A DNA stretch of 64,000 nt from Botryllus schlosseri (Eukaryota): assembly GCA_051294905.1 (NCBI GenBank), contig CM119373.1, positions 3,596,001 to 3,660,000 of the forward strand. The letters are read 5' to 3'. Positions 5,971 to 62,114 of this stretch are shown here, one piece after another. A program made the translations under genes and the position numbers. The notes beneath the pieces are model-generated. The model was not told where the DNA came from and ran no database searches. It saw only the letters and a program-made list of their open reading frames with translations. The stretch's first letter is position 1. Each line of letters opens with the position of its first letter.

Positions 5971-8900
5971 ATGGTGAGCATTAAAGGAGTTCAAAGATGC
6001 ACGCTGATAATATTTCTTACATCTGCTTTCCTAAACACAGGTAAGTCCATATTTTCAACAATTTTGTTCTAGGGGAAAAGAATCCTGCTAATCAGCACAA
6101 CTATGGCTCACCACCGTGTACCTAAAGCCATAAAATAACATAGACCATTTTGTAGACAAACTGTATCCGTAAGACATTATTTATTATACCAGAGATTACT
6201 GCAGGTCCTAGATGATGTCTGTTTTGTTAACCATTTATTAGTCATCTGGCAATATTTTGGGGATAATCCTAACCTTCAGAGAAACCTTTCGTATGGCCTA
6301 AATAAAATCTTGCCACACAGCATCAACCAAAGACATCCTGACTTCAAAATGTGATGGCGTGACGGAGTCAAGGAATGGAGACTTCGGATTGATGGACGTC
6401 GCAAACAACATGGACCCGAATTGCGAGTTTCACATGTCAACCCTCGCCAGCTTGAGAAGAGACCTACTTTTATTTGACACTGCCAGAATGAATTGCACAG
6501 GAAATGGAGTAGTTACCTTCCCAACAGGACGTAAGTCGATATATATCATACTTCTAATGGAGTCAAGGTAACTGGTGGCCTATAATTTTCACGAGACCGC
6601 AAGAAATGAAAATCCACAATAACCTTCGAATCATTCAATTCTCATGAAATACAAAAACATACCTTATGATTCAACACTAATAACTACACGAAATGGAATC
6701 GATCACTGATAACGATCGGGAACAATATGGTCCAACAAAACACGCTCCAAGAACTTATCTCTAGAAGCAATAATGTAATATCTGTTGAATGTTTGCGGAA
6801 AATATGTCTACGACTGATGTCAATTGGAATAATGATATATCAGCGTGTGTATAAAGGTATCTTTGATGTAGCCGAAGAGACAGAAATTATGTTGGTACGA
6901 CAGATGTGAAGTAAAAGTGATAGGCAATCAAACAACATAGAGCACCGATGATGATATATTGATATATTATGTAATATATACTTTGAAGGTGTCTGATGAT
7001 TTCATGGCAATTATTAAGCCCCATTTCAGAATGACAATCAACCATATTATTATCAATTCTAGAAGTAGGGGAATTTGGAGTGTATTAGAGATTATCTCTG
7101 ATCAAGATGCATTTTTGTTGGATATTCTCAAGTACTTGCATAACTTTTGTGTAATGCAAGCAAATCCGTTCACAAATTCCATCTATACACGATGCCTTGT
7201 GAATATTATAACATGAAATAGGTAATCCAGAACGGTCAAACTTATTGCGTGACAAATTTAGGTGGGCAAAAGAACTACTGCAATCAGGACAAATGCCTGG
7301 TGTTCAAGAGAAGAAGGAATAAATACACGAATGAAGATATATTGGCGACAGTCCGAGATGTGTTTCCAACATGCATCGAGTACGATATCCGAAGAAAGCC
7401 AATCCCTAAGAGAATAATTGCAACACCGGAGACAAAGTCATTCACGCTGAGATACAAGGTTTTGGAAATGGTGATATCCACAACACATGCTTCACAAGAT
7501 ACCACAGCTTCTAGCGTCACGGACCATTTGTCTGCAACAGGTAACGAAACTTGATCATTTTAATGCTACCGACTACATGTCCGTCATAGAACAATCCAGA
7601 TTCAATCTTCTAGAAAAGAGATGCTAATTAGACCTATTCATTGATCCGTGACCAAAGGTTGGGATGAATTATTGTTCAACTGACTTGCGTCAGAATAATT
7701 GATCACTGACTAATGACGCATTTGACGCATGCCGCTACGACGCACATGATATCAAATCATGACATACCAACGGTTAAATTACAGTTCATTTATAATAAAC
7801 TGGATGTAATGACTGCATTTAATACGTGAACTGCAGACATCCAGCGATTGTAAATGCTTGTTATAGAAAATAATTCAAATTAAGGTGGTCAGAAATGATT
7901 TGCCATTATATGCTATAGCATTCCATAATATAACAATGTTTTGGCAATGTGGTTTTATACTGTTAGGAGCTTGACGACCCACCACAATATATATATATCA
8001 ATGTTAGCATTAGAAAATTGTGGATTTCCCTCAACGTTATTACTATTCAATGAATGCTGTGTTCTTGACTGATTCATGTATTGCATATTTTAGTCTTTAT
8101 CCAGATACTTTACCGAACTAACCACGGTCTTGTCTCTATTTATTTCAGATCAGCAGTCAGAATTACATACAACGGCTAATGCTATTGAAAGTGCAACATT
8201 ACTAGACACCACTGTCTCAGATAAAGATTCATGTAAGTTAGTATATATAAGGTAGATATTATTTAGTTATCATGTATGAACTCTGCAGTAATCTCAATAA
8301 CATCAACTAAATATCAGATTCAAAACAATTCGGATTAAAACCAATATGGTGAAGTTTGCTGTGGTACAACATGTCATAACTGCCTTTAAACCAACAGCGT
8401 TTAGGTAATACGGATTTATACTTGAGGATCCATCAGTATAAACTATGTTGGTTGCATTTGAAACAGTTTGAATTACTATTTGCAGTATTGCTGTCAATGT
8501 GTTGCCCTTGGCAGTGCTTATTGTATCGGTAAACATTTAGTTTTCACCCTGATACTGCAGTATGCTAGGTATTGACGTCTCTAAATTGACTTCAGATCAG
8601 AAGTTACGACTACATACAACATCGGCCGCTACTACAAGTTCACTAGTGCCAGACACCACTGCTTCATCAAAAGATTTAAGTGAGTACACATACAAATTTA
8701 TAATTTACAATAAACTGGGTCATAACCTCAAAAACATCAACTACAATGCAAGTTAGTTAGCATTCGGGATGTTCAAAATGAATCACTGTCTTTTCACGCC
8801 ACATGATTCGAATCCTGTCAAGTTTAATCAATCATAACAGTCATATTATGCATAAGGTAAACAGTGCTTTAAATCAGAAAAGCAGTTTTGTTAGTCCGCT

Positions 8901-10573
8901 CACTATAGAAGTGATATAAAACTGTTAGCTGACAAGACAGAGTAATGGTGGAGTGTCCGGCCTTTTGGTCGGTAGGTTGTGGGTTTAATCTCTGGTCGGG
9001 TCAGACGAAAGACCTGGTTAGTAACATTGGCATCCATGACTTCCCCACTTGGCGCTGACCAGTACCGGGATAGCATGGCGGGTTGGTGCAAGACTTAGAA
9101 AGCCGTACAAGGCTATACCTGCACCTTCCTTGTCCAGCGGCATATCATGCACTCACAGAATGCATATGCACAAATTGGGTGTATGCATATCATGAGTCAG
9201 TGTGCCGCAAAAACATCAAGGACAAAAATATACTGCGTCCTATTCCTACACATACAATATATCAATATTTCAGTCGGAACACCTACATCTGTCCAGACAA
9301 AACCTACTCCAACCAAAGAAACGAAAATTGAGACATCCAAGATCGTGCTACCTGAGGCAACAACAAGTATGCATGATATTCATTTATGATCAATATAATA
9401 ATGATCAATCACCATGGATTGCGAAAATCCCTGGAGAATATCATAATATAGACTACCATTTTTTCGTTGCATAACTCAATGCTTATATCACAGTGGATCA
9501 GCAATATCCAACAACCAGACAAAGACAACAAACAGTAATTGCAGGAACTTTCGGGGATACAGCTCTAACTGAAGAGTGGACAAGTAGGTCTTGCTATATC
9601 ACTATATACTATCTTGGTTAATCGGCATTATACATGCACATAATATATATATATACCGTGTATACTTTTAAGTGGAGTTTGGACTTCCATCCACACTCAC
9701 TAGGAATCAAAAGAAAATTGCCCAGAAGCACACATCTGCACATACGTGCACTTTTCAGTTTTATGTGATCCATAAAGTCGTGTTACTGACATTATACTAT
9801 ACTGTACGTACGAGGGTCATAACTAAAATGCAATTCCACGTGCAATAGGTTCAAAAGCAACGCACAACTATGAACCAACGACTGAAGGAATCACATCAAA
9901 TCGAAACGAGGACGCTGGGATTAATCACACATCTGGCATTTTCAATAACGGCGTAGCAGGTATGGCTTTATATTCAGTTACGACAAGGGTATACAAGCTT
10001 AGCATTGATTTAGTGGATTTAGGGATAGATCTTGGTTGCGACTATCAACCTTGAGTTTTAATTTAATACAATTTATCACTTTATAAGTAGATGAATGCAC
10101 AATTATTGTACCATTTCCGTTTTCATTACCGCCAAATACTTCATTAACAGGCCTGCGGACTGTATAACTAGCCTGTCTCTTGGCTTGCTACTAGCTCCGT
10201 CATAAATATTAAATTACACAATGTCCAAAATGCTTTACAGGTCTTGGAGCGGCCAGAAATAAGAGCGACCAAGTTCAAGCATGGCATATAGCTGTCCCGA
10301 TTGCTATACTCCTGTTGATAGCAGCCGTTATCGTGATGATTTTGATATTCAAAAGGTAAGATTACAGTATATTTGCTGTCATTGCTTCAATCAATCTATG
10401 ACTGAAAGCTATTTTTATGTGATTGAATACTTCGTGGATGAAGGCACAATTTTAATTGCTATAGAACTGAAAAATTATGTAAAAAATTCATTCATATTTT
10501 TTAAATCTTCAGCAAGGACAAGAAAAAAGATCCAGAGCACACAGCCGCAAAGTCTGTTCCCGCACAAGCGTAG
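5971..10573 (+). CDS. Gene A: type-I membrane protein, CUB-like domain + mucin stalk + TM (398 aa predicted)
   Basis: 10 exons: 5971-6040 (signal MVSIKGVQRCTLIIFLTSAFLNT), 6321-6530, 7262-7540 (CUB-like), 8149-8232, 8596-8679, 9274-9366, 9494-9583, 9849-9959 (stalk), 10241-10355 (TM WHIAVPIAILLLIAAVIVMILIF), 10513-10573. Total 1197 nt, open frame, all GT-AG. Confidence 0.88.
8930..9252 (+). mobile_element. tRNA-derived SINE (family 1) in an intron of gene A
   Basis: Degenerate A/B-box head, then GGTCAGACGAAAGAC...CTTCCCCACTTGGCGCT core. A homologous copy lies at 18165-19322. Confidence 0.7.
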
Positions 10574-13500: not shown

Positions 13501-13969
13501 TTCAGAGATGCCTTATAACATGACATAAATAAAATCTTGCCACACAGTATCAACCAAGGACATCCTGACTTCAAAATGCGACGGTGTTGCGGAATCAAGG
13601 AATGGAGACTTTGGATTGATGAATGTCACAAACAACACAAATTCGACTTGCGTATTTAAAATGTCGAGACTCGCCAGCTTGAAAAGAGACTTATTTTTAT
13701 TTGACACCGCCAGAATGAATTGTACAGGAAATGGAGCAGTTGAGTTCCCAACAGGACGTAAGTCGATATATGCTTGTAATGGAGTCTAGAAGGTACCTAT
13801 AATAACTAAAACCATTATATCTTCTTGTAAGGTACTGCTACTTTATACGAAAACATTCTTTATCATTTAACACTAATAATTACATTGGTTCCTTGTGATA
13901 CAGAATTTGAATATTGCAACGAGCAACACATTCATATTCGCAATTTAATCGCTCTAAGCGCAAAACTAA

Positions 13970-14810: not shown

Positions 14811-16417
14811 GAGTGAATAAATTGCGAATATGAATGTGTTGTTTCGTTGCAATACTAATAACTACATAAAATGGAATCGATCATTGATAAAGACCGGGCA
14901 AAATATGGTCCAACGAAACAAGACCTTATCTCCGGAAGCAATATCATATTATCTTATGAATCCCTGTATTATCCGGCTCATGTGCAACAACATTGAGATT
15001 TTAAATATGAAATACTTCCAGTAAATAATTCGCCAAGACAGCAAATGTCGAACATATCCATAGGCCACATTATAACTATCCGAAAGCGGTTTTGCTGCTT
15101 CACTCTGGGCACCTTTAGGAACATTTCAATGACACTAATCACAAAGGCAAAAAACCAATACGAAACCTTTGTGAATAACGTTGCTGCTACATGAACCGTA
15201 TTTATGACCTGTAATATAATGTGTATTTTAGTACTATTATGTATTGCTTTAACAATAAAGCATTGCTGTGAAAAATCAATGTATGGATTTGAAGGTTACG
15301 TTTTGAAATCATTTGATTGGTGCGGGCCGCGAGAGACTAAAATGTCTGAATCGAGCCCGCGGCCCAAGTTCAGTTTGACACCCCTAGACCATAGACATGT
15401 TAAAGGTGACCGATAATTTCATGGCAGGTATCAAGTTGCTTTCTAGATGACAATCAACAATATTATCATCAATTCTAGAGGTAGGGGAATCTGGAGTGCA
15501 TTAGAGTTTATCTCAGGCCCACATGCCTCTTTGTTGGATATTCTCAAGTACTTTATAAGGCTTTTGTGTAATGCAAGCAAATGCGTTAACACATTATATC
15601 TATACACGATGCGTTGAATATATTTAAATTTGAAATCGGTAAACCAGAATAGTCTTATTATTGCTTGACAAATTTAGGTGGAAAAAAAAGAACTACTGCA
15701 ATCAGGACAAATGCCTTGTGTTCAAGAGAGGAAGTAATAAATACCCGAATGAAGATATATTGGCGACAGTCCGAGATGTGTTTCCAACATGCACCGAGTA
15801 CGATATAAAACAAAAAACAGGCGATAGGATAATTGCAACACCGGAAACGAAGTCATTTACGCTGAGATACATGGTTTTGGAAATGGTAATATTACCACCA
15901 ACTACACATGCTTCGCGAGATACCATAGCTTCAAGCATCACGGACCTTCTGTATGTATCAGGTAACGAAACTTGATCATTTTATTGTTACCCATTACATA
16001 GCAGCCACAGATCAGAATCAAGCTTCTAGAAAAGAGATGCCAATTAGCCCTATTCATTGATCCCTGACCAAAGGTTAGGACAAATTATTGTTCTCCTGAC
16101 TTGCGTAAGAATAATTGATAACTGACTAATGACGCATGCCGCTACGACGCACATGTTATCAAATCATGACATAACAACGGTCAAATCACAGTTCATAACT
16201 TGTAAACTGGACGTAATGATCGGATATATATATGTGCATTACGGTACGGCATGAACTGCATAGATCCATTGATCGTAAATGCTTGAATCACAAAATAATT
16301 CAAATTAAGGTGGTGGGGTATAATTTGCCATTATATGGCATAGAGTTACATTAAATAACAATGTTTTGATAATGTGGTTTTATGCCGGTACGCACTTCAC
16401 AACTGACTACAATATAT

Positions 16418-16840: not shown

Positions 16841-18164
16841 CAATATATTAATGCTGGTATTAGAAATATTGTGGATTTCACTTAGCAGTATTATTATGAA
16901 TGCCGTGTTCTTGATAGTTTCAGGTATTGTATATTTTAGTCTCAATCTTCATACTTACTCACACTGAGCATGGTCTTGTCTCTATTAATTTCAGACCAGC
17001 TACGGCTACATACGACGGCTACTGCTTTTGAAAGTGCTCCAATAACAGTCACCACTGTCTCCGCAAAAGATTCATGTAAGTTTGTAAATTTAAGGTACTG
17101 ATTATTTATAGTTAAGATGAATTCTGGAGTATTCTTGATCACATCAAATAAATAGCAGCTTCATAGCAACTTGACTAAATATCAATTTGGTGAAGTATGC
17201 TGTGCTTTTCCCTGCCATACCTATCTATAAACCAGCAGTGTTCAAGTAATACGGTTTCATATTGGTAAGCCATAGAGGATCTATCAGTATAAACAATGTT
17301 GCTGGCATTTGCATCAATTTAACTTGCTTTTGCTTTTCGCTATTAATATGGTGACTTTGGCATTGCTTATTGTACTGTTCAACCTTTAGTTTTCACCTTG
17401 ATCCTTCAGTATGCCGGGTATTGACTTGTCTATATTAATTTCATATCAGAAGTTACGACTACATGCAATCTTACGCTTAGATATCGTGTCCCTAACGCTA
17501 GCAATAGTGCATGTAATCACTTCAATTGCGTTAGAACTCAACTTTCTCATTAAGAATTAGTATCTTATAGGAAGCAGCTATGAATTGACTTTAGCTATCC
17601 CTAGTTACCATACATACAGACATGGTATTATATTTGACGAAATGTTAATTGCACATGGTAAGGTCATACTTGGTCACAAAAGGGGTTATTACAGATAGAT
17701 AAGTAGATAAGTACTTTTAGCAGTACATAACAGAACACTTTCATTGCTGATGATAATCCAGGATATTACGCTAACAGCAAATGTGTTGAATAGCTGATAA
17801 CGGGTAATATTTTCACACGATGTATCAATATTTCAGTTGGAACACCTACATCTGCCGAGACAAAACCAACTCTACCCGGAGAAATAGAAATTGAAACATC
17901 CAAGATAGTGCTACCAGAGGCAACAACAAGTATGCATGATTTTCATTTATGATCAATATAATAATGATAACCAAACATAGATTGGGCTACCATTTTTTGT
18001 TTCTTTACTCAATGCTTCTATCACAGAAGTCCCGCAAAAACCAACAACTAGACAACAGACAGTAATTGAAGGAACTGCCAGCGAAACAGCTTTAACTGAA
18101 GAGTTGTCAAGTAGGTCTTGCTATGTTAATAAATGCTACCTTGGTTAATCAGCCTTACACATGC

Positions 18165-19322
18165 GCACCGACAAGATAGTGAAGTGTCCGGCTTCTTGAT
18201 CAGTAGGTCATGGGTTCGATTCCCGGCCGTGTCAGACCAAAGACCAGTTTAGTAACACTATCCATGCCTTCCCCGCTTGGTGCTCAGCAGTACCGGGATA
18301 GCGTGGAAGGGTGGTGCAAGACTTAGAAACCCGTACAAAGCTATATCCGCACCTTCCTTATCCAACGGCATATGCACATCATGCACTCATGGTATGCATA
18401 TGCACAGATCATGTGTATCAATGTATGTACCGTAATTTTCCGAATGTAGTGCGCCCCCATGTATGATACGCACCCTTAAAATGACGTGTATATTCTGGGA
18501 AAAAGCTTGTACCCATGTATAGTACGCACCCTGCATTCGCAGTACATGAGTACATGAATAGTTACGGTTTAGTATTCGATGTTGTTCTGATTTGCGATGT
18601 CACTGTCGAACAATCATGACATAATGATCGCTAATCATAATACAATTAACGGTATTGTCTCTAAACAAGAGTAGATAGTAGCCAAAGCCTGTGAGGTCGG
18701 CGACGTGATAGTTCAGGCTAGCGACACACGACATCTTGCGCACGAGGCCTATTACAATTACAGATGCGATTGCTCAGGCCAACGGTTATGTCGGGCGCAC
18801 CAATCCTGTTTACGAAATCGATTATATGTTGCGTACATGGCCTCTAGTGTATGCGATTGTTAAGGCCTGTCATTGACGCGATGAATCCGCAAGGATTGCC
18901 GCCCACGCTTGTAGCATTCAGCGACCTGATTTCGCTCGCGTACAAACTGCAAACCAACTCAGCAAGAGATCGCGTGCTTTGCCAGACGACTCTCGATAAT
19001 TAGAAACACGCTTTTCGTTAATTGGCAACCCGCTTCTCTATTTGGCAGCGCGTCACACTCTATAATACGAATTACGGGACCCAATGGCTAGAGGTGATGC
19101 GCGATTTAAACAAACATGGAGAATGGTGTGATTTCAAGTTTTTGATCGAGGGATTTTTTTTCAATGCTTGCTGTACCCATGTATAATACGCACCCCCCTA
19201 TTTTAGGGCAAAAAATCGGTAAAATTTTGTGCATTATACATGGAAAATTACGGTATATCATGAGTAGGCGTATATGCCGCAAAAACGCCGAGGACAAAAA
19301 TAAACTATGTCCTTTCCTTCCC
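18165..19322 (+). mobile_element. tRNA-derived SINE (family 1) interrupted by a MITE
   Basis: B box GGTTCGATTCC at 18213-18223. The body matches 8930-9252, and the tail (GCCGCAAAAAC..GGACAAAAATA) resumes at ~19256 after the MITE. Confidence 0.75.
18430..19253. mobile_element. Tc1/mariner-pogo type MITE
   Basis: TIR CCGTAATTTTCC / GGAAAATTACGG flanked by TA on both sides. A second copy lies in reverse orientation at 37550-38638. Confidence 0.88.
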
Positions 19323-40100: not shown

Positions 40101-43100
40101 GATAGTTTTCAAGCAAAAAACTAACGTCAATATCGATTTTTACTCCAGGGGTGGCCAACCCTCCGCAGTAGAAGACAAATTATGCCCCCGACGATAGGCT
40201 ACTTCATTCAATTAGGATGTGTTGGCTGCCGTCAATATGCAAATTAAATTTACGAATTGACTTCCTAATTAATGAGAGGTTTGAATTATTCCTGAAATCT
40301 TCTTCGCTCTATGCGCGGTCCAATGCGAGGTGATTCTCGATTTTAATATAGTAGTCGCCTTTGTAATCTAAGTCACAAGTACAGATGCGAACAACAGAGG
40401 AAAATGATGTGCCCCATCAAGAATTTCCTATTTGTAATCGTGTTCTCGTCATCACGAAGGAAATCTGTTTCTGGTAGGCGTAAATTTAGGCGAATCCAAA
40501 ATATTTCCACTATTCCGGCAATCCTGATGGGACACAAGAGCATGCGACAAAGAGAACTAGTAACAATTGGACCAATCAAAGATGCAGCACAGCAGCATTA
40601 ATAACTTCCCTAAATTTTCGAAGACATCCCCTGCATCAACTCTACCGGTGAATCTGATCACATGGACTGAGAAAGAACAAATATTTGATAGTAATATGTG
40701 AAACTATACTAATATTATTGACGAAATTCAATCATGGATATGAAAAAATTTTCGCGCTTGGCGCAACTACAAAATGCATCCGTGTACCTGTTCATAACAT
40801 GACTACTCACGATTTCGGTGCGCATATTAAGCCGATATTATTATATAGATTAGTCCGGAGTTCACCGGCAATGGACATGGACAGTTTAACGTGGTTATTT
40901 GGCCTCCAGTTACTTCATTACGACTATGAACTGAAATGCGGCCGTGCGCTACATAAGTAATTGATTGTGGCCGTGAATAGCAAAAAGGTTGGCCACCCCT
41001 GTTTTAGTTGCTGAAGAGTGTTGTCATGTATCGTGCGCAGCTCACAGTTCAAAATAGAATGAAATTGATGATATTGATATTTTTTGTTGTATTTGTATTT
41101 CTTCAATAAAATATTATTTATTTTATGATAACTATATGCCCGTCGCCCATGTAAGAGAGCACAGCGTTACACTGACGAAGAGTTATCGAAACGTGGTTGT
41201 TAAACTGCGTTGCATAATTTTATCTCGATATTGAAGTCATGCGGCCCGCGGCCCATACGAATTTTGAAATGTGGCCCGCGACCCATTTTGAGTTGGCGAC
41301 CCCTGGTGTAGATAAAATAGAAATACCCAATTCTACGCATATAGAGAGAACGAATCTACCTGAGACACGCATGAATCGTTTTTTATAAGCACATCACTGA
41401 AATAACTAAGACTGGAGTGGCCAATCTGAAATCACACTCGTGATCCGAATTATGTCAATCTCGTTTAGGATTTCTGTGATGTTTAGCAGTTGAAACGTTT
41501 CAAACTGCGTGGGCCTTAAGGTCAAGATGTCGCGCCAGAAAATAAACATAAAAAATAAAATAGGAAGTATTTACCTCAGAACAGTAGTTCTCAAACTTTT
41601 TAGGACACGACCCCCCTTATGATGATGAAAGATTTCACATCCCCCTTATCGTCATATCACAAAACGCAACCAGGATGCTAGCAAACCTAATCGGTAGTTT
41701 GATGGCATGGAAGGTTACGACTGTGGATGAGAGATTTTGAGATATGAAATTCAGACTAAATACAAAGCAATAATTATGAATCTCGTATAATCGCACGTAG
41801 CGGGGAATTTTTTTTCAGTTTCGCGCCTCCTCCAGATGCTTTCACGTCTCCAGTTCGAGAACCACTGCCTTAAAATTATCATGGTGAAATATGCGAAGAA
41901 AAAGTTTAATCAAGTCCCTGCATTAATTCGATTTTTAGTACGTGTACGTAAGACGCTCGCGGGCAGCACAGAACGGTGTTGCGGGCCGCATGCAGCCCGC
42001 GGGCCGTAGTTTGCCCACCACTGCATTAGAATCACAGATACAGCCACGAATTTTTAACTAGATTACATTAGAATTACAGTTTATAGCTACACAGTTTTCC
42101 CATGTCACATCAAAATTACATTTAGAGCTACACAGTTTATTTTAAAACTAGATTAGAATTAAAATTGTATACCGGACATATAGTTTTTTTAAATAGTCAA
42201 TAGTGATTCGGGATATGGTGAGGTTGTTTGTTGTTGTTTTGTGGTATTCATGGTGGTTGACGACTACTATGATCATTTACACCAGACCAATTTTCTTCAT
42301 TTTATTCCATAGCTGCAGACTCGCAGCACGGCCCACTTCTAGGCTTTTTTGTAAGACACCGCCTACACGGATGAGATGGTGAGGAGGAGCCTGGATAAAC
42401 CTCCAACACTTGGGTAGGAATTCTGGAGTCGACCTCGGTCGGACTCGAACCCGCAACCCATTGGTGTTGCAGCTGTGGATTACACCATTACGCTATCTCG
42501 CCATTATATGGTGTTATTGTAAAATGATCCGATTCAACCGATGCCTATATATGACCAACGCATACTCAATAACTAACCAGCATAAAAATATGTTACAGGG
42601 GCAGCATGTACACTTTGTGGCGCATATCCGGCAACCACCTGCCACATATATGCGGACCAAGATAAATGCACTGCGTCAGAACTTTGGAACGCTTTATTTC
42701 AAAATTATGCCGACTGCATCGGAACCAGTTCGGTCATTCATAGAGGCATCAGTGGCACGCCGATGGAACTTATGACAAACACAACATTGGACGTTGAATT
42801 CGTAACCGATTACATATTGTACCCATGCCAAGGACCCGCAAGAGAAGGCATACCAACACTGGGAACTGGGAAACCAATTCAAAAAATCGAAACCGTAAAT
42901 GGACTGAATGATATTTGCCAGAGCGTCATCCACAGTACGCCACCATCCGTCACAGAATCGCCAAAAACGCCAACCGAGACACACACGAACATAAGTCAGC
43001 CTGCACAGCCGATAACTCCCATACCAATGAGTGGTCAGCAAACCACAGCAACACAGCCACCTACGATGAAACCTACGGAAACAGCAGCAGTGACAGACCC

Positions 43101-44627
43101 CTTAATGACTATTCTATCAACAACAAAGTTACTAGTTCAAACTACGCAGCACACATCACAAACAAATAGTAGAAGTCACTCATTTGAAACTTCCACGGCA
43201 GCATCGGTCACACAAATTTGGGTAACAACATCGATACAGCAACCCACAACACAGATTCCACAACAATCAACAGCCTTGTATCAAAATTTGACAACAGTTG
43301 ACCCCAAAACCCAGTTGGCAGATCAACCGGTGATCACAATTGGGCTCGAAACTTCGACAACAGATGCACCTCATGGCATATATTCAACGACAGCGATAAA
43401 TGAAGCACTGGAATATGGAGCTACCCGTCATGAGAGAAGTGAGTACGTAAATGACAATTACCATTACCGAGGCGCAAGGTTGTAACGATACTAGGTCAAC
43501 CTGGGTCTCACAACTTACAACATATTTGTATTTCATCTATCAATTCTAGTACTTGAAAAAGCAGTGCTAAACTGAGGAAAATTACTATATTTTCAATGTG
43601 GGCCAGTAGATATCACCCAATCAAGGTTGTAAAAACATCGGACTGAACATGACTTGAACTCCAAACTGAGCAGGGAACACAATGACTTGGACTCGAGTCT
43701 CAATACTATGTCTCGGACTCAACCCTATGCTCTCCAACTCCGACTTGACTTGATGGTGAATTGAAAGTGACACGACTTAAGTTGAGTCAAAACTATACAA
43801 GTAATTTTGACTTGTGACTAAGAACCTAGTGACTTGGTTACAATTACAACACTGCTGAGGCAAGAGAGTGATACATTAAGCCTGAAACAGTGAACGATAT
43901 CTCTCCATCTCCAATTAAAAGGTACGGTCAGATTTTTGACAAAAGAATCAGATATCAGATTAGTACATTTTCATTCATAAGCCTACTGGTACTAATGACT
44001 GGAGAGGTGAACTGTCAGCGAAATGGCCTAATATCCTTTAAAATGCCAATAATGTTGCTACCAAAGCAAGATTGATCACATTCGGAACACTTCAGGATCG
44101 TGACCACATAATTTCTGTGCCTCGGATAATGAGTGTGATTTAATGTTAGCGAAACAGGAAATATTGTTCCATTTAATAGTTTACACAGGAACTACTTCTT
44201 TTGAATGCGTACATTCGCGATCGTAAAGAAATTATCACTTATCTTATTCAATGACATTTTTCATGTCTGCATACAAGCATTAAAGTTAAGAAGTTCAATG
44301 CATCCAAGCTGTAATGTTGAGGAATAGCATTCCTTAATCCGATACTTTTTACAGATGAAGAGACCACCGCAGATCCACAGAAGCAACCAGAGAGCCCTCA
44401 CTCAACGTCCACAGGCTTTCATATTATGGCAATCATATTGTCTCTACTGGTTGCAATATTTATAATGTAAGACAAATTTGAATTATGGCATCATTACATA
44501 TGTAACTGTTGTGGTTTATTTCAGTGTGTTAATATGGAGACTGCGCAAGAGGAGTACCAACAAGAAGAAGCTTCAATCGCAAAGAACGCACAGCAGTGAA
44601 AAAGAGCAACAGGAAACTTTTGTATAG
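37116..44627 (+). CDS. Gene D: CUB-like + long mucin stalk + TM + tail ending ETFV (443 aa predicted)
   Basis: Exons 37116-37173 (signal MRISQWLILVWYLVTIIST), 38936-39154 (C..YNQVCTWSV..IVMRFTELDIDCDKGYL, the clearest CUB N-half), 42599-43438, 44355-44466, 44525-44627. Total 1332 nt, open frame. Confidence 0.88.
37550..38638. mobile_element. pogo-type MITE, second copy (reverse orientation)
   Basis: Reverse complement of 18430-19253, with an internal ~130-bp tandem duplication (~38180-38450) and an 88-bp filler near the left TIR. Confidence 0.85.
39395..39593 (+). repeat. Degenerate ~40-bp minisatellite (TATAGCTACACAGTT core), continuing at 42024-42170 after the transposon stack
   Basis: Repeated TAGCTACACAGTT/ATTACATTAGAA units on both sides of 39594-42023. 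Confidence 0.7.
39994..41305. mobile_element. Middle hAT MITE
   Basis: TIR CAGGGGTCACCAAC / GTTGGCGACCCCTG, perfect TSD GTGTAGAT. Confidence 0.92.
40146..41001. mobile_element. Inner hAT non-autonomous element
   Basis: TIR CAGGGGTGGCCAACC / GGTTGGCCACCCCTG, degenerate TSD TTTTACTC/TTTTAGTT. Confidence 0.85.
41582..41867. mobile_element. Small hAT MITE
   Basis: Ends CAGTAGTTCTC / GAGAACCACTG, TSD CCTCAGAA/CCTTAAAA (6/8). Confidence 0.7.
42395..42502 (-). mobile_element. tRNA-derived SINE head (family 2)
   Basis: Minus strand GGCGAGATAGCGTAATGG ... GGTTCGAGTCC ... GGAGGTTTATCC, parallels 20940-21031. Confidence 0.6.
43622..43854. mobile_element. Internally deleted GACTCGAGTC MITE (reverse orientation)
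   Basis: Reverse-complement similarity to the ends of 29763-30285. Confidence 0.65.
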
Positions 44628-45397: not shown

Positions 45398-48300
45398 ATG
45401 GAGTTAGTCTCACGCAGGATAACCATGATGTGCTTCTGGATCAGTCTACCTGCAGGTAATTTCGATTTGACAGAAATGTAAAATGATGTAATTCCATGGC
45501 ACTATTATTATGTCTATACATTGTGTGCATACATACGAAAATAAAGTGAATATTCGGTTTGATATAACAGGTGGGCATATAATTTTAATAGCACATGTAC
45601 AAGCCTAGCTTTATTCAATACTTCAGTTGATCGATTTTAATTTAGGATTCAAGCTCAAATGATTACAGACAGTAAAGTGCAAATCGTTATATCGACAAGA
45701 ACAGAGGTTACTAGCTCGAAAGTGCTGAAGGCCACTGTTTAATCTTGATCACAAGTTAATATTACCGATATCAGTTTGGCCCAAATGGTATGCTGCGAAG
45801 GCAAGATTTGGTAGGCTGATCTGGTATGGGATCTTTTGAAATTGTGTAAGGTTTGCGAGCTTTTGGTAGCATATGGATCCTACTGGCTTGCCACGCAGTT
45901 GCACAATGGTGACTATCGCTGCGTCTGGTTGATTTCGACCACACGCCACAATTGAGCCGCGACTGATCAAACATATACCGTTGCTTGTGCAAATATGTCA
46001 ATATTACATTCCAGATTCTAGGTAACTGAACATATTGAAACCTACTTGCCTCACTTGTACGATATAGTTTTGGCAAACCCAGCGTTATTAGGATATCAGG
46101 GTTGTGACCAAGTCACAAGGTTCCGAGTCACAAGTCAATCTCCCGTTTATAGTTTTGACTCGAGTAAAGTCGAGTCATTCTCAATTCACCACCGAGTCAA
46201 GTCCGAGTCCAAGTCACGGAGTAGAGTGTCGAGTCTGAGTCACAGTGCTTTGACTCGAGTCCGAGTCCAAGTCACTATGTTGACAGTGCAGTTCCGAGTT
46301 AATGCCATGCAAAACCCACTTTTTACAACTTTGCTCGGTGATATCGAGTGCATTGCATTCACAATATACTTACTGTCCTCACTTTTAACAGTCTCTGGTA
46401 GCATTTGCAAGTACCAGTCCAGTACGGATAGAAAAAATAATAATAGTGTGATAACTTTACTGTTCTTCGAAAATACAACGACATCCCTGTCTTGGTAGAC
46501 CCAGTCTCGAACCATATGACTTGGTTCAAGTCATGCGCAATGACTCGAGTACATGTCGAATCATTACACAAATTGACTCCAGTTGAGTCATTTTTCATTT
46601 TTGTGAAAATGACTTGAGTCAAGTCACCAAAGAATCGCGACTCGAGTCATTACAACCCTGTTGGATTAAAGCAAATTAGAAATCTTAATCCACATTTTTT
46701 TTCAATTCAGAATTATACAGGTTTGCTCAAGAAGTTACTGGCGTATCATTCGAGATTACCCGGCCCACTGGCAAATTATAGATTACCATTTACAGCTCAC
46801 TAACCACCTTCACAATTTTTTCCAGTCTACGGAATAATCACCCAAAACGGTGATGGCTGTACAGGCAGTACCATCGACGAGATGACTGAAAGAACTGGTG
46901 AATTATTTGTCAGCAACGACGATAACCGAGACTGTGATTGGACCTTCCACTTGCCAGGGCACCTCCAAGCCAATGCAATAATAATGCATATCATGGATGT
47001 AGATATCGATTGCAACAAAGGATATTTAGGGTTTACTGATCAATACGGTAATTACTAGGGCAAGTTTTTGCAACTTTTGCAACTTTTTTTTACAGCTTCC
47101 GGAAGCTTCGTAAATAGGGTGGAGTGAAAAATGGAAAATTTTGAATTTCAAAACGGACACTTGATATGTGGTGCCAAATTAAAAAAAAATAATTTCTATA
47201 TTAATTTTGGGCTCGTGCACCCTCTAGTGGTCGTGCAATTGCAACGAACGAGCCACAAATATCAAATTTTGATATATATTGATTACCGCTTATGCTAGAA
47301 AGCTGGTTCTGGGCTTAAAAGATGCGGAAGCAACAAGTTTCTATCTCACTTCCACAGAACTTCGTCTTCAAAATGAACAGAAAAAAAGTTACGAGCAAAT
47401 TTTTGATCTTTAGACCATTTTTCGGTAAAAATTACGCACTGAAGCAGGCTACGAGGCCAAAAGCGTGTAGTGATTGATCTTATGACTGACAGCTCTATAT
47501 TAAAAGCACATAAATTGCAAATACATATTGAAAACACAAAAACACCAATTCTATATTGAAACAAGATATACTTCGAATATGGTTTCACTACCAGAGTATT
47601 ATTATGCACAAACTTTAAAATCTTGTTTTGTAATAAAGGATTTCATCTGCTTTCGAGGTTTCAGTTTTTGTGTGATGAGGCCATCTCTACGTTCAAATCC
47701 CGACACATGGGCAATCGGCATATGCTTCGGTCACCACTTTAACGTCTCTTTCCACTGCCTGGTTGTGCCAAGGATGATTGATCCTTAATGGTGATGACCT
47801 TGGATTTTCCAGCTCGAGATATGAAAAGTTTTTGATTGCTGGTGGCTGTTCCACATCTTTTAGATGAAAGTTGGCAATTAAGTGGTATGATTTGGCCTTG
47901 ATGTTTATAATTGGGATTTTTAACAATCTGATTCTAGTATCAACGTTGTTTTTAGGTTTCGGTTCATTATCATATCCTCCTTCTAAGTCGTCAATTGCAA
48001 TATGATATTCTGTTTGATCTGCTCATAGTTGTAGTCTTGCAAGTCTTCTGAGGCCTTCATCATCATCACCGAGCATTCCCAGATGTGCAAAACATGCCTT
48101 TTGTTGTAGCAAAGATAGTGCAAGGTTACGAATTGTGTATTAGAAAGCTTTTGTAACATGGGAAACTATGTTGCAGAAGTTTTTAGCACCATCAACAATG
48201 GAATCGTGCCTTTTTATTTCAAACCATGACGGACAATAAACCTCAATGCAGAATTGAGCAAGATAGTTCAGATTGCTTGATGGATGACTCTGTCGCACAT

Positions 48301-51300
48301 AGCAACTCAATATTCGGCATGTTATATGTGGGACTGAATCACCCATAATTGTGCCTTTTTATTTCAAACCATGACAGAAAATAAACCTCCATGCAGAATT
48401 GAGTAAGATAGTTCAGATTACCTGATTGATGACTCTGTCCCACATAGAACATGCCAAATTTTGACGTTCTATACATAGCATACATGTGCGACAGAGTCAT
48501 CCATCAAGCAATCTGAACTATCTTGCTTAATTCTGCATGGAGTTTTATTATCCATCATGGTCTGAAATAAAAAGTCACAATTGTTGATGGTACTGAAGCT
48601 TGTGCAAAATAGTTTCCCATATTACAAAGCTTTCTGATACACGAATTCGCAACCTTGCACTACCTTTGCTACAACGAAAAGCATATTTTGCACATCCGGA
48701 TAATGTTTTTTGGGAATGCTCGGTGATGATGATGAAGGCCTCGGAAGACTTGCAAGATTACAACTATGAGCAGATCAAACAGAACACCAGATTCCAATTA
48801 GCGACTTTGAAGGAGGATATGTTAATGAAACAAAACCTAAAAACAACGTTGACACTAGAATCAGATTGTTTAAAATCCCAATTATAAACATCAAGGTCAA
48901 ATCATACCACTAAATTGTCAACTTGAATCAAAAAGATATGGAACAGCCATGAGCAATCAAAAACTCACCATATCTCGAGATGGAAAATCTAAGGTCATCT
49001 CCTCAAACATCCCTGGCACAACCAGGCAGTGGAAAGAGACGTTAAAGTGGTGATCAAATCATCTGCCCATGTGTCGGGATTTAACCGTAGAGATGGCTTA
49101 ATCAGAGAAAAACTGAAGTCTCAAAAACAGATGAAATCCTTTATTACGAAACAAGATTTTAAAGTTTGTGCATAATAATACTCTGGTAGTGAAACCATAT
49201 TCGAAATATATCTTTTTTCAATATAGAATTGATGTTTTTCTGTTTTCAATATGGATTTGCAATTTATGTGCTTTTAATATAGAGTTGTCAGTCAAAAGAT
49301 CAATCACTACACGCTTTTGGCCTCGTACCCTGCTTCAGTGCGTAATTTTACCGAAAAATGGTCTAAAAAACAAAAATTTGCTCGTAACTTTTTTTCTGTT
49401 CATTTTGAAGACGAAGTTCTGTGGAAGTGAGATAAAAACTTGTTGCTTCCGCATCTTTTGAGCCCAAAACCAGCTTTCTAGCGGAAGCGGTCATCAATAT
49501 ATAGCAAAATTAGCTATTTTTGGCTCGTTCGGTGCAATTGCACGACCACTGGAGGGTGCACGAGCCCAAAATTATTACAGAAATTATTTTTTTTTAATTT
49601 GGCACCACATATCAAGTGTCCGTTTTGAAATTCAAAATTTTCCATTTTTCACTCCACCCTATTCGTAAATACTCATAATGTATGTAGTATGGTGTTTTAA
49701 TCTGTTTGGAGGAGTTTTATGTTGCAACTTTTGTCTATATTTTTCATGCAACTTTTTTCTGCAATTTTTATCAAGTATTGCGCAAAATATGCTATAAAAC
49801 TATAATAAAGACTAAATTAATGGATTTCAAGTGACAATGCGGCCCACCATAGGCGCCGGACGCAGGTATACTGGGCATGCCGTGTTTACCTAGCAATTTT
49901 TTTCGGGTGTGCGGCATACTCACTATTCCGTTAGTCATGAAACTCCTTGAACTAACTGGTAAATTGTGCGAACCCAATGTAAATAAAAATGTAACCATGA
50001 TCGATTGAATAGCGAAGGAAGAAACGGAACAAGCAGACACCATACAAATTTTAAACTGCCGGAACCTTTCGAGTATCTCATACCCTCATGATTTCAAAAA
50101 AAATGTTTAAATGCAACTTGTGCAATTTTTGGTAAAATTAAAAAAATAAATGCAACTTTCTCAGGTTTTTAGTGCAACAAAAACTTGCCCTAGTAATTAC
50201 TAATCTAAAATATTTCGGCTTACAGATATGAAGCAGATTGCTCACATCATTTTGCTTGAGCAGTACTTCAACTGTGCATGAAATTGGAACAAATTTGGTA
50301 AGATTAACCCTTTGGCGGCCTCTAATTAATTGAATCTCAAGTGAACAAACATAACATGAACATTATCATGGAGCTGCTGCTTTATGTTAGTTACCTAATG
50401 CTTATGTCGCAGCTAATAACTAATGATTTTGTAGAATACTTTTGATAAACTGATCATCAACTGAAAACGTATTGTGACGATAACATGAAAATTAATTGAA
50501 ACCAAGAAACAGATGGGTATATGAATGAAGAAAGCGATGATAGATTGTAAAGCATCTATTCATTGACGAACGCTCAAAATGACATAAATGGTGTAGGAAA
50601 GTGGCTATTAATCAAATCCATGGGAACAGATGATTGGCCATGAACAACATTGACGTAAATGCAACGCTCATTCAAGCCATAACAATTATTGTGTAGCAGT
50701 TACCAGCTTACAGCTTTTACTGGCAATGCCATGATTTCCACTGCAGAATGAACACATCACAATATTACTATCAACAGGACCTGGATGTGGATTATGCGAA
50801 AAGGTAGACATTCCAACAGATTTCTGCCAAGTGTACATTGAAGAAAATGTCTGTACAGAAGTTGAAATATGGCAGGCCGTAGCACTCCACTACCCGCAGT
50901 GTACGCACAACATAATCCACCGAGGCACACGAGATCTATCGTTGCATTTAGTAACAACGGGAGCAAGCTGGAGAGAATTCACGCTGGAATACACGTTGCA
51001 TTCATGTACAGGTTCCACGAATCCGGCGGTACCGGTACTCGGCTTAGGGCCGCCAATTAAAAAGGGCATATTGTCGTCAAAATTTTTTCCGCATGGTTGT
51101 CCGGTTACGTTACCGCAAGAAGAAAAGACTACAGCACTGTTTGTAGAAGATGATACGACTTCTGATATGAGTAGAGAAGAACATTTGCTCTCTACCATTG
51201 AAAATACAGATACAACGAGCGTGGAAGATACCGCTCAATATCAAACTACAACGGACGGCAACACGATCAAATCAACAACTGAGACAGCAACCACAAGCAA

Positions 51301-52771
51301 CAAACTTACAGCTAAACAACCATTCACGACAGAGGAAGACAGACTAACAGAAAAGACTTCAACTTCAGATGAAGATTTGAGTGGCGAAAGATATACCATA
51401 CAAAGTACTGAAAGACTGCAATTGGTGATAAATGTAGACAAAAATTCTCATAACCCTGCAAACCCGACTGAAGCGAATAGCGAGGTGGTCAAGCCATCGA
51501 CTGGAGCAAGTACTACAAGCAACATGTTCACCACAAAACAACCATTTACAGAAGAGTATGATGAAACAAAAAGTCAGAACTTGAATTCCAAGGAAGATTC
51601 AAGTTATACAGCATATGATGTCCAAAGTACTGAAATAATGCGCTTAGTAACAACAGAAGATGGCAGTAATCGGGGAAGCCAACCAATCCTGTCAACGAGA
51701 GCTCTAAATAACAGAACAGCCATGCTGAGAGATACAATAGCCACAGCAACAGAGGGATACCACACACAATCAGGTAAGCAAAGCAGTTCCAAATGGAGAT
51801 GATCGCAGGTGTCCAACAGTCAACATTTAGTAGGCCATAATTCAAATAATTTCAAGTCGAGACATAATGAATGTGTCACTGCGAATACAGCTCACGTCAA
51901 GCTGTAATCAAGGATTACGTTTGTGGGCGTAGCACTTCGATATGGTTTAAAAATAATTCAAGCTATCCAATGTCATGTCTATTGACGGGCAAAAGAAACC
52001 CCGGATTCGGAACCCAGTCAATTCAGTTTTCATGACATATAAATCCTTTCCAGCATGTACAATTGAATCAACATGAATAATAGAACCTAATATTGGGCAT
52101 AACTGGCCACTGACTTGAACGAGGCAATTTTCGTGCTAAGAGATCCGGTTCAAATGGAAGTGATAATGCAAAAAGTACTACAATTGTTCTAGCACTCAGC
52201 TCGCTTATTCAAGAACCACACTCATTCTTTTGAATGCAATTGCCAAGATGCAAGATACCCTGAACATAGGTGGTGCACATGCCATCCATTCTCATTCAGT
52301 TGATCTTGAAGATCAGACAGAAATGATACTTGGAAATTTATAACGAGACACTGTAGCAGTTAACTGTGTATTTTAATAACAAAGCATTGAAGTTTCCTTG
52401 GACTGGGAAGGTTTTCGTGCTTTTCTAATCCGGCGAACAACTATTTTCGATCTCAAGATGCATTTAGGCTGTTAACTAACCAGCCATTTGAATACTGTCA
52501 ATTTATATCTTATGTTTTATTACCCGGCGATACAGATCAACCCAGTGGCAAACCAAGTGAAGACGCAAGTAATATCTGGATTACGGTGATAATTCTTGGA
52601 GTGTTGCTATTATTAGGCATCGTAACGCTCATCGCATTGATAATCAGAAAGTAAGATTTGGCAAAATTGCGATCGCGACAAGTTAATATGTGGTCTTCAA
52701 CGTATCCTTATCTCTTTTGCAGGAAATGGCATAATGACAAATATCATTCTGGAACAATTCACAATACATAG
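45398..52771 (+). CDS. Gene E: CUB-like + long mucin stalk + TM + short tail (479 aa predicted)
   Basis: Exons 45398-45455 (signal), 46826-47047 (C..NRDCDWTF..IIMHIMDVDIDCNKGYL), 50778-51773, 52536-52650 (TM IWITVIILGVLLLLGIVTLIALII), 52723-52771. Total 1440 nt, open frame. Confidence 0.87.
46097..46660. mobile_element. GACTCGAGTC hAT MITE (copy 3)
   Basis: TIR CAGGGTTGT / ACAACCCTG. Aligns with copies 1 and 2. Confidence 0.85.
47056..50192. mobile_element. Non-autonomous hAT element at the exon-2 donor of gene E
   Basis: 15-bp perfect TIR TAGGGCAAGTTTTTG, GCAACTTT subterminal repeats, perfect TSD GTAATTAC (47048-55, 50193-200). Confidence 0.93.
47115..49661. mobile_element. Nested foldback hAT derivative with ~1.2 kb inverted arms carrying transposase C-terminal remnants
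   Basis: Ends TAGGGTGGAGTG / CACTCCACCCTA, perfect TSD TTCGTAAA. The arms encode decayed YCPSWFEIK, AYFAHP and HNQAVERDVKVVTEA motifs in opposite orientations. Confidence 0.9.
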
Positions 52772-54880: not shown

Positions 54881-56402
54881 CATCACATTTTACACGTGCA
54901 AAGTATACATAAATATCAAATATCAAAATATCAACATCAATTGAAAGGGTATAGAAATATAATTTTTGCAAGTGCGCAATTTTCACTTCAGTCTGATGTT
55001 ATAAAGTCAATCATAAATCATTTATATGACTCTAAAAGTTCTAAACCATTGGTTTCCGAAAGGGGGCTATATCACCCCATGGGGAAGATTTTGAGAAAGA
55101 AGGGGGCACAAATAACAAATGAGTCGATTGTGGCGCGTAAAGGTTCAAAGGTTCAGTCAATGTTATTGATAGACAAGCGACTCAATGCTTGACTCATTTT
55201 AGCATAGGAAAGGTGAAAAGGAAGGTTGGGCCTCACTGTTCAAAACCGAAATTTGTATACTACACGGTGATTTCCTAGCATATTACGTGTGGACCCCTTA
55301 TTTCTCAATCTACATGTCAAGGCCTTCTTATAAATATTCTCACACATTCGAATTTTGATGCACCCAGTATTTACTACCAAGATACTGACAATGACATGTC
55401 AGAATGCTGTACGATCGGAAACAAGACAAGACTACACATGTCACAAGACGGGTTCCAGTTGTGGCTTTGATCTCAGCTCCATGAACTTGGCTAGACCTCC
55501 AACAGATTAAACAGTATTCTAGGCAGACTAACGGTTATTATGGTTACCTTTTTTTCTGCAATAAAGTTTGCAGACCCCTGACCTACACAATGTGATGGTT
55601 AATATGGTGAATCCCAAATTAATGTGGTCATGTTAATATTTGGAAGAGACAAGATACATATCCGATCTGAAGCCCGATAAGGGTACCTTTGGCAATAAAC
55701 TAGAAATGCAGAATATTGATGAATGATGAAATTGTTTACAGTACCAATCAAAGAAACAATACTAACCTACCCATCATAACACTCTAGAAATGTTTCTGAT
55801 ACAATTGGACTTGAATCGACCAATAGAGATTATGCTGTTCATAGTAACCAGGACTATATTGATGCTCACAGTTTGTCTATGCATCATCATGGGAAACATG
55901 ATACAGAAATAAATTCCTTTAATATGATATCTCTCAGGATTCACTGCGTCAACTGTCAAGTTTCTACCTACAACATGTACCGTGCAACAACAGGGAGATA
56001 TGGATTTCAGGACTATAAACGTCACGAAATAGACTGGAAAAAATTGCAAATTCGACCTCGAAATTTTAAACCTGGTCAAACTATCCAGAGATGTTATTCT
56101 ATTCGATACAGCAAGTCTGAATTGTAAAGGTGGAGGAGCTGTCAAGTTTCCTTACAGCTCTCCGACACAAAGTTAGTACTCTTCCCTATTGTTTGGAATG
56201 AAATGAGCAAGTAGTCTAGTCATCTAAACCAGGCGTTTCCAAGCTTTTTTGATCACCTAGGCTACCCCTTCAAGTTTTGTGGATGGTTACACGTACCCGG
56301 AAAATTCCAGATGCCAATGACTGCAAGATCATTACATCAAGCTCAACTCTCTTTAAGCTACTCCATGCCTGGAATAACATGGCCAATGACTGAACCGGAC
56401 AA

Positions 56403-60438: not shown

Positions 60439-62114
60439 GGCATATATTGTAATTACATCATCAAAGTGTCTTTTTAATGTTTAAGATTATGAAACGAAAG
60501 ATTATTGCAACAACACTGCCGGCGAATGTATGGTGTACAGAAGATTACGCGAGACCTATCCCAGTGAAGATGTATTAGGAGTGGTTCGCGACGAGTTTCC
60601 AAATTGTAAGAGCTACGTCATCAGACCGAAATTTAAACGAGACATAATCGTAGCACAAGCCACTACAGCCTTAACCCTACGCTACAAGCTTCTCCGTATT
60701 CCTACAGCAACAACAGCATCTACTCAAATTTTCGCATTGGCGGATAACACAGACAATTCCTTGACAACAGGTAAGGATGTTATAGAATTGGAAATTTAGA
60801 ATTAAGCCAGGCGTGTCAATATTTTAGTATTTTTTCATGAAATCGGCAAGCAACGAAATTATCAACTCAATTTTGATACTTGTTGATACTAATTGGCCTG
60901 AAAAATATGAAAGTAGAAAAGTGGTACTCTTCACAGACGATTAGCAATTCACAAAATATCTTTGTTTTAGTTCCATACAGCTTAGCACAAACGTGAATCG
61001 AAACAGTGACAAGCAGAGGACAAAGAGAAAAGGGAGTAGACACAACAGCAGTACCAGACGTGAAAAAAGACACCACATCTTTTACTTTGACAAGTAATAA
61101 ACTACAACATCCGTAGAACACTGCAAAAATAACACAGGCCAAATAATCAGTATCCCTGACAGTAGCAGTAGACTTTAGATTATCAAAATTGCATGGACAT
61201 AAGTGGTATTTCGAACATTTCTGATTGTGAAACTTTCATTGGAGCTTAGCTAAAATTCGTAACGTATCAGGTAAACACAACAAGTAGATATATGAGCTGT
61301 GCAACCGGACACATACTGTTCCAGTAAATGGTTTATCTTTGTCACAGCTCCAGTTGACGTATCACAAACGATAAATGGACTGGTCACAGACGGAAAAGCC
61401 ACAGAACAGGGAGAAGCCACAAGAGCAGTGCCGGATGAGAAGACAGACATCACTAAAGCAACACAGACAGCAGTGCCAAAGGATAATACAGCACCAAGTT
61501 TGTATTTAACTTCTTCTTGTGATAAGAGTGAATTTGACTGTTTACCATAGTAACTGATTTAATACAGTGGCTATATTACTCTGTGAAATGTAAGTTTTGA
61601 CTTCTACAGTACAATAAGTCACATATAATATGTGTGCTTTTCAATCAAACATATTAACTTTCTTTAATGGAGAAGTAATGACAGAGAAGTGTCATATCGT
61701 TATTACCGTGACATAATACGTTGGAAAATCAACATTGGTCGCAATTGCCATAAATCTGAAATATTGTGTTGCTGGTGACGGCCATAGTGAATTTATAGCT
61801 ACAGTACTTAATCCAGGATATCATTTAAGATCAAGAGTCAACCACAAACCAACAACCTGCTGCAACTGAAAGTTTAATGTCGAAATTAACTGGCGGTCAG
61901 ATCGCTGCTATTGCCGTACCTCCAGCATTAGGAAGTCTTGTGATTATGTGAGTAGCCTGTAATTCAAATGATATCACCTTAAAGAAAACTATGAGCAAAT
62001 TCTATTTTCATAGAGCAAGTTTGATACTGAGCAGAAGAAGAAATGGGATAGTCCATCGTCACGAAAGGATAATGTCTCTTGATAAAAAGGAAGAAAGCAA
62101 AGTTCAGCCTGAGC

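What the first reader, a model, noticed from the sequence alone, without database searches (positions are those of the whole stretch)
7262..60770. Non-canonical CUB domain with a ~35-40 aa Cys-bounded insertion, and covarying cysteines that suggest its disulfides
Seen: in D the canonical CUB C-half LCG...P..L.T...L.VEFVTD is interrupted by AYPATTCHIYADQDKCTASELWNALFQNYADCIGTSSVIHRGISG. The same insert aligns in E (FCQVY..VCTEVEIWQAVALHYPQC), A/B (KCLVF..KYTNEDILATVRDVFPTC), C1/C2 (CIVY..SDNDVQHIVENEYPSC) and F (ECMVY..YPSEDVLGVVRDEFPNC). D and E have two extra Cys (CxxC before the insert, and mid-insert), and A/B/C/F lack both together. Inference: the outer insert Cys pair forms one disulfide and the covarying pair another, stapling an amphipathic helix onto the beta-sandwich. 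This could be a new CUB subtype with an added ligand-binding surface.
Basis: partly seen in the sequence, partly recalled or inferred. Interest (0 to 1): 0.75.

Follow-up and report, generated by a model that had tools for sequence, protein, structure and literature searches.

The report
Sea-squirt CUB-like domain with stapled insert

Summary
All seven copies (A, B, C1, C2, D, E, F) lie on the + strand. Each has two phase-1 exons, and the cited peptides and cysteine pattern are as described.

- **Splicing:** A spliced mRNA from a related species (L015) and a spliced contig from the same species both confirm the exon 2 to exon 3 join.
- **Insert:** It lies between strands 7 and 8, runs about 30-35 residues, and consists of one strand plus one helix.
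- **Outer cysteine pair:** In the six-cysteine copies these two must pair, by elimination.
- **Other extra cysteines:** D and E have four extra cysteines, not two. Four relatives (X, Y, Z upstream, and P0003) carry the mid-insert cysteine without CxxC, always together with a cysteine just after the last strand.
- **Not tested:** The tools returned no model coordinates, so no cysteine distances could be measured.
- **Range:** Only 4 relatives turned up among 1.84 billion representative proteins.

The scan had already noted this array in the adjacent upstream window (s1-281512).

The parts
6321..6530 (+). Copy A, N-half exon (210 nt, phase 1-1). It encodes strands 1-6 with Cys 1-3.
   Evidence: AG/GTAAGT splice sites. 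The join with 7262-7540 gives one open frame.
7262..7540 (+). Copy A, C-half exon (279 nt, phase 1-1). The canonical 4th Cys is at 7279 and the insert runs about 7282-7374, bounded by Cys 7294 and 7372. The last three strands follow.
13548..13757 (+). Copy B, N-half exon
15678..15961 (+). Copy B, C-half exon. It is out of frame with the N exon as assembled, because the A-run at 15682-15689 is 2 nt longer than in A.
29445..29654 (+). Copy C1, N-half exon
30723..30937 (+). Copy C1, domain part of the C-half exon. The open frame runs on to 31111.
31393..31602 (+). Copy C2, N-half exon. It is probably the second domain of the same gene as C1.
32154..32368 (+). Copy C2, domain part of the C-half exon
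38936..39154 (+). Copy D, N-half exon (219 nt, phase 1-1)
42599..42918 (+). Copy D, structured part of the C-half exon. Cys positions: CxxC 42607 and 42616, insert-bounding 42640 and 42715, mid-insert 42667, post-domain 42826 and 42916. The S/T-rich stalk continues to 43482.
46826..47047 (+). Copy E, N-half exon
   Evidence: A spliced contig of run X1 covers 46824-47049 joined to 50780-51198.
50778..51100 (+). Copy E, structured part of the C-half exon. Cys positions: CxxC 50786 and 50795, insert-bounding 50825 and 50900, mid-insert 50852, post-domain 51005 and 51098. The stalk continues to 51799.
55938..56171 (+). Copy F, N-half exon with an in-frame TAG at 56030-56032
60486..60770 (+). Copy F, C-half exon
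44321..44627 (+). Copy D, transmembrane segment split over two small exons, then a short tail ending ETFV
52391..52650 (+). Copy E, transmembrane exon
10213..10356 (+). Copy A, transmembrane exon

Best explanation
The window holds seven domain copies from a tandem array of about 16 genes. The family appears to be restricted to sea squirts. It encodes type-I membrane glycoproteins built from a signal peptide, one divergent CUB-derived beta-sandwich (two in C1/C2), a Ser/Thr-rich stalk, a transmembrane helix and a short tail.

Two phase-1 exons encode the domain. It keeps the ten CUB strands and the two canonical CUB disulfides (Cys1-Cys2 and Cys3-Cys4). About 30-35 residues are inserted between strands 7 and 8. 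The insert consists of one extra beta-strand and one 11-residue helix, with a conserved [DE]-[IVL]-[LW]...[FY]-P-x-C pattern, and its two ends are tied by a family-invariant disulfide.

The subfamilies add further staples in pairs:
- Eight-Cys members add a Cys at the N-cap of the helix and a Cys two residues after the last strand. These most likely bond to each other and pin the helix to the C-terminal strand.
- Ten-Cys members (D, E and relatives) also add the first Cys of the CxxC and a Cys in a roughly 35-residue C-terminal extension with an LGxGP motif. These most likely bond to each other and tie the extension back onto strand 7.

The insert is best read as a structural embellishment of a surface recognition domain. 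The ligand is unknown.

**Shown:** the exons, the splice, the Cys patterns, the predicted fold and secondary structure, purifying selection and rarity. **Inferred:** all disulfide pairings and any binding role.
For: - **Exons and splicing:** The motifs and exons are as described. The exon 2 to exon 3 join is seen in the spliced mRNA contig L015 and in a 645-nt contig of run X1 from the same species that skips 47049 to 50780.
- **Model:** AlphaFold2 gives pLDDT 83 and pTM 0.81, with strands 11-14, 20-25, 30-37, 43-47, 57-67, 72-78, 83-86, then 96-101 and helix 108-118, then 124-129, 134-140, 146-155.
- **Sequence hints of CUB:** The N-half profile's best PDB hit is cubilin (E 0.014), with Cys2 and Cys3 in register. 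An atlas feature search puts 63 of 100 neighbours in PF00431.
- **Cys table:** Across 20 family members there are 9 with six Cys, 4 with eight and 7 with ten. The mid-insert and post-domain-1 Cys are always present or absent together. CxxC-first and post-domain-2 are likewise.
- **Selection:** Pooled dN/dS is 0.24-0.42 in all parts.
- **Rarity:** The family profile finds only 4 proteins among 1.84 billion representatives.
- **Membrane topology:** Transmembrane exons and tails are present.
Against: - Pfam CUB and all other Pfam models miss the domain even at E<=10.
- PF00431 finds 149 matches in this genome but none in the array.
- hhalign against canonical CUBs of the same genome gives only 4% probability.
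- Foldseek on PDB, AFDB clusters and the Atlas ranks generic jelly-rolls first.
- The Cys states need only two changes on the tree, so the pairing argument rests on parity and parsimony, not on many independent events.
- No model coordinates were available, so no Cys-Cys distance was measured.
- The model region around the last Cys has pLDDT 47.
- The model is of a 56%-identical relative of E, not of a window copy.
Confidence: 0.7

Rival explanations
1. In D and E the first Cys of the CxxC bonds to the mid-insert Cys and staples the helix to strand 7. The two post-domain Cys then bond to each other.
For: Inside the window the two Cys are present or absent together. Both lie within 22 residues of each other, near the start of the insert. 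Ten Cys also allow this pairing by parity.
Against: X, Y, Z (L014) and P0003 have the mid-insert Cys without a CxxC, and each also has the post-domain-1 Cys. In those proteins the mid-insert Cys can only pair with post-domain-1. The D/E versus rest contrast is a single branch.
Confidence: 0.2
2. The domain is not derived from CUB. It would be an unrelated jelly-roll sandwich that only resembles CUB in outline.
Against: The first 23 structural neighbours of 48,161 are all CUB, then Z drops to cupins and CBMs. Cys1-4 and the C-x-W motif sit in CUB register. Language-model neighbours are CUB. The domain is bounded by phase-1 introns and sits in a type-I membrane protein, a usual context for CUB.
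Confidence: 0.15
3. The copies are decaying pseudogenes, and the conserved pattern is only shared ancestry.
For: B is frame-shifted and F has an in-frame stop. Raw RNA runs X18 and X22 give almost no reads on E's exons.
Against: dN/dS is 0.24-0.42 in six recent paralogue pairs. A, C1, C2, D and E have intact frames and splice sites. Spliced transcripts exist for E in this species and for an E-like gene in another species.
Confidence: 0.05

Closest known systems
Canonical CUB domain (Pfam PF00431), for example C1s/MASP CUB1, neuropilin a1/a2, TSG-6 CUB_C, cubilin and spermadhesins
   Different: No Pfam score is obtained. A 30-35 residue strand-plus-helix insert with its own disulfide lies between strands 7 and 8. 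By motif inspection, the acidic residues of the Ca2+ site (E, the D of Y-D, and S-D) are not kept. The domain is split by an intron after strand 6.
Other divergent CUB-like families in Pfam (CUB_2 PF02408, CDCP1_CUB_6 PF23665, CUB_animal PF26080) and the meteorin N-terminal CUB (7tl6)
   Different: None of these Pfam models scores on any copy at E<=10. No helix insert at this position was found in any library searched.
The neighbouring 8-cysteine CUB-like type-I receptor genes noted earlier by this scan (s1-281512)
   Same: They belong to the same tandem array and the same family. Members X, Y and Z, upstream of the window, align with the window copies over both half-exons and share the Cys-bounded insert.
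   Different: They represent the eight-Cys state, which has the mid-insert and post-domain Cys but no CxxC. The window holds the six-Cys and ten-Cys states.

Membership tests
CUB domain (PF00431) | Scores above the Pfam gathering threshold (21.4 bits) | tested here: not met
   No hit at E<=10 on the half-exons or on the whole spliced domain. A PF00431 six-frame search of the genome gives 149 matches, none in the array.
CUB domain (PF00431) | Ten-strand jelly-roll sandwich superposable on solved CUB structures | tested here: met
CUB domain (PF00431) | Four conserved Cys forming the Cys1-Cys2 and Cys3-Cys4 disulfides | tested here: inconclusive
   The four Cys are invariant and in register with cubilin and with canonical CUBs of this genome for Cys2 and Cys3. 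Bonding itself could not be tested because no coordinates were returned.
CUB domain (PF00431) | Profile-profile homology to canonical CUB alignments | tested here: inconclusive
   hhalign of A6 against A8 gives probability 4% and E 0.0098, with only the C-x-W to strand-5 stretch aligned, in the right register. hmmsearch of the N-half profile against PDB puts cubilin first, E 0.014.
Ca2+-binding CUB subset | Conserved Glu, Asp (Y-D) and Asp (S-D) that bind Ca2+ | tested here: inconclusive
   By eye, the aligned positions read C-N-K-G-Y and V-T-T-G or I-A-T-P in place of C-x-Y-D and F-x-S-D. No residue-level structural alignment was available.
   This holds in 20 of 20 aligned C-halves, including four proteins from other species. 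The model shows strand 96-101 and helix 108-118 at pLDDT 84-95.
   Structure prediction returns no coordinates, and no model file appears in /data.

The most novel reading that the evidence does not exclude
The strand-helix insert creates a new binding face on a CUB scaffold. On this reading the array, which evolves by gene birth and death, would be a sea-squirt-specific cell-surface recognition system, for example self/non-self or gamete recognition. Stepwise addition of disulfide staples (6, 8, then 10 Cys) would tune the receptors.
Probability: 0.12. Interest if true: 0.7.

Novelty: new variant of a known kind. Interest (0 to 1): 0.45.

Why it matters
CUB is one of the most common extracellular binding modules in animals, yet this family escapes every sequence model and has almost no relatives in public data. 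It shows how far a CUB domain can drift and still be recognised by its predicted fold. It also gives a defined case of a helix grafted into the strand 7-8 loop, with a graded series of six, eight and ten cysteines that makes the disulfide map easy to test. The array, of about 16 type-I membrane genes, is a candidate lineage-specific recognition system in a close invertebrate relative of vertebrates. There is no functional evidence yet, so the value is mainly in annotation and structure.

Tried and rejected
- **Homologue search:** The search for homologous proteins with D's C-exon gave nothing.
- **Foldseek:** Searches of PDB, AFDB clusters and the ESM Atlas gave only generic jelly-rolls at TM 0.3-0.48. 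They did not help, and none showed a domain with the same insert.
- **C-half against PDB:** hmmsearch of the C-half profile against PDB found only chance hits (adenylyl cyclase, E 1.6).
- **Fragment alignments:** MAFFT alignments of the half-exon fragments misplaced their ends (A4, A5, A7). A6 was the least bad and was used for folding.
- **Hydrophobic moment:** For the helix it was not above shuffles in most copies. Amphipathicity therefore rests only on the conserved hydrophobic positions.
- **dN/dS by region:** The insert showed no excess, so a diversifying ligand face is not supported.
- **Literature:** Searches for a described ascidian CUB array or a CUB with a helix insert found nothing relevant.
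- **Raw RNA reads:** Runs X18 and X22 were almost silent on E, so tissue expression could not be addressed.
- **Other copies not folded:** A six-Cys or eight-Cys copy could not be folded because no unspliced reference covers a whole domain, and I did not type joined sequences.
Full report
**What is in the window**

The window is G000:C3:3596001-3660000 of a 495-Mb genome. An earlier scan note calls it a sea squirt. It has 38% G+C and no N runs.

Each copy consists of two exons.
- The N-half exon is 210-234 nt. It carries three invariant Cys in the pattern C-x-G ... C-x-[WF] ... C.
- The C-half exon starts with the fourth Cys and carries the described insert.
- Both exons are flanked by AG and GT sites in phase 1. 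Joining them for A gives one open frame.

The finding's limits, 7262 and 60770, are the first base of A's C-half exon and the last base of F's.

Downstream lie Ser/Thr/Pro-rich open frames, transmembrane exons and short tails. Plausible signal-peptide exons lie upstream. The products are therefore type-I membrane glycoproteins.

**Is the splice real?**

A profile of 14 C-halves was searched against 1.84 billion representative proteins. It found only four proteins, all unnamed singletons from Logan or ENA assemblies.

One of them, P0002, comes from a 2077-nt contig, L015. In L015 an E-like N-half runs straight into the C-half, then a stalk, a transmembrane helix and a 22-residue tail. This contig is a spliced mRNA from another species. 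It is 56% and 47% identical to E's two halves.

In the same species as the window, a 645-nt contig of run X1 covers 46824-47049 joined to 50780-51198. That is E's exon 2 to exon 3 junction, within 2 nt of the GT-AG sites I predicted, and no exon lies between. Raw RNA runs X18 and X22 gave almost nothing on E, so expression there is low.

**Fold**

Sequence methods mostly fail to recognise the domain.
- Pfam gives no family at E<=10 on the halves or on the whole spliced domain.
- PF00431 finds 149 CUB matches in this genome, but none in the array.
- hhalign of the family against eight canonical CUBs of the same genome gives 4% probability. Only the C-x-W to strand-5 stretch aligns, in the correct register.
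- The N-half profile's best PDB hit is cubilin (E 0.014), with Cys2 and Cys3 aligned.
- A language-model feature search puts 63 of the 100 nearest clusters in PF00431.

AlphaFold2 was run on L015:27-611 with a 31-row family alignment (A6) and no templates. It gives pLDDT 83 and pTM 0.81.

Structure searches give mixed results.
- Foldseek against PDB, AFDB clusters and the Atlas returns generic jelly-rolls. TSG-6 CUB ranks only 42nd.

**Where the insert really is**

The model has ten strands in CUB order, plus one extra strand (96-101) and one helix (108-118) between strand 7 (83-86, which ends in the f-C-G-like Cys) and strand 8 (124-129). Solved CUB domains align up to model residue about 154-158, which is the end of strand 146-155.

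In D this means SSVIHRG is strand 8, MELMTNT is strand 9, and LDVEFVTDY is the last strand (the GF.a.Y position).

The insert is therefore about 30-35 residues, roughly 25-30 more than a normal loop. It has the conserved pattern Cys-x-[VI]-[YF] ... [DE]-[IVL]-[LW]-x-x-[AVT]-[VIT]-x-x-x-[FY]-P-x-Cys. It matches no Pfam family.

**Cysteines**

The own genome holds 14 clear members. Thirteen lie in tandem at C3:3.594-3.704 Mb and one D-like copy lies at 15.9 Mb. Two weaker members lie upstream.

I aligned 20 C-halves, including the four foreign proteins. They show three states.

| State | Members | Extra Cys beyond the six-Cys set |
|---|---|---|
| Six Cys | A, B, C1, C2, F, L008, L009, L011, P0004 (9) | none |
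| Ten Cys | D, L010, E, L012, L013, L015, P0001 (7) | the eight-Cys additions, plus the first Cys of the CxxC and a Cys in a C-terminal extension with an LGxGP motif |

In the six-Cys proteins, if the canonical pairs hold, the two insert-bounding Cys have no other partner.

In the eight-Cys proteins the mid-insert Cys has no CxxC to pair with, so it must pair with the post-domain Cys. Parsimony then pairs CxxC-first with the extension Cys in D and E.

Three caveats apply.
- The tree needs only two changes of Cys state, and the D/E clade is one branch (100/100).
- The model is poor around the last Cys (pLDDT 47).
- The tools give no coordinates, so no distance was measured.

**Selection and function**

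Six recent paralogue pairs give the following pooled dN/dS values.

| Region | dN/dS |
|---|---|
| N-half | 0.42 |
| Pre-insert | 0.24 |
| Insert | 0.39 |
| Last strands | 0.26 |

The genes are under moderate purifying selection, and the insert is not a hotspot. The helix's hydrophobic moment is not above shuffles in most copies, although four hydrophobic positions are conserved.

I read the insert as a stapled structural addition to a surface recognition domain. A ligand role is possible but unsupported. By eye, the Ca2+-site acids of classical CUBs are not kept.

B is frame-shifted and F has a stop. Together with the orphan exon in L016, this points to birth-and-death evolution of the array.

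**Novelty**

No paper found describes this array. The scan itself had already noted the same array from the adjacent window (s1-281512). I used that note only as a lead to look upstream for the eight-Cys members, which I then checked myself.

Verdict: a new variant of a known kind, of moderate interest.

Noticed in passing
window 15678-15693: With splice sites homologous to A, copy B's C-half exon is out of frame. An A-run is 2 nt longer than in A, and stops follow. This is either a pseudogene or a homopolymer assembly error.
   Followed up: partly
window 56030-56032: There is an in-frame TAG in copy F's N-half exon, where the sister copy (L016:7327-7539) has Lys.
   Followed up: partly
window 29445-34759: C1 and C2 have no signal or transmembrane exon between them, and only one transmembrane exon follows (34604-34759). 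They are probably one gene with two tandem CUB-like domains.
   Followed up: no
L016:3502-3699 (G000:C3:3663502-3663699): This is an orphan N-half-like exon that lacks the second Cys and has no matching C-half. It is preceded by a sequence also seen near window 41239-41388.
   Followed up: no
window 44524-44627 and L015:1233-1298: D's tail ends in T-F-V and the E-like mRNA's tail ends in T-S-V. Both look like class-I PDZ-binding C-termini.
   Followed up: no
G000:C3:3580179-3580962, 3586449-3587759, 3592753-3594803: Three more divergent eight-Cys members (X, Y, Z) lie just upstream of the window. They have the mid-insert and post-domain Cys but no CxxC.
   Followed up: yes
L010 / L022 (G000:C3:15925613-15927100): A D-like paralogue, 78% identical to D, lies 12.3 Mb from the array on the same contig.
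   Followed up: partly
window 46500-46700 and 46900-47100: Read and contig depth is very high, but the records match only in part (0.96-0.97 of laid reads run on into unlike sequence). These are dispersed repeats flanking E's N-half exon.
   Followed up: no
window 18000-26000: This stretch has higher G+C (0.40-0.42) and lies between B's C-half exon and a B-type transmembrane exon at 25964-26179. It may be an insertion inside gene B.
   Followed up: no
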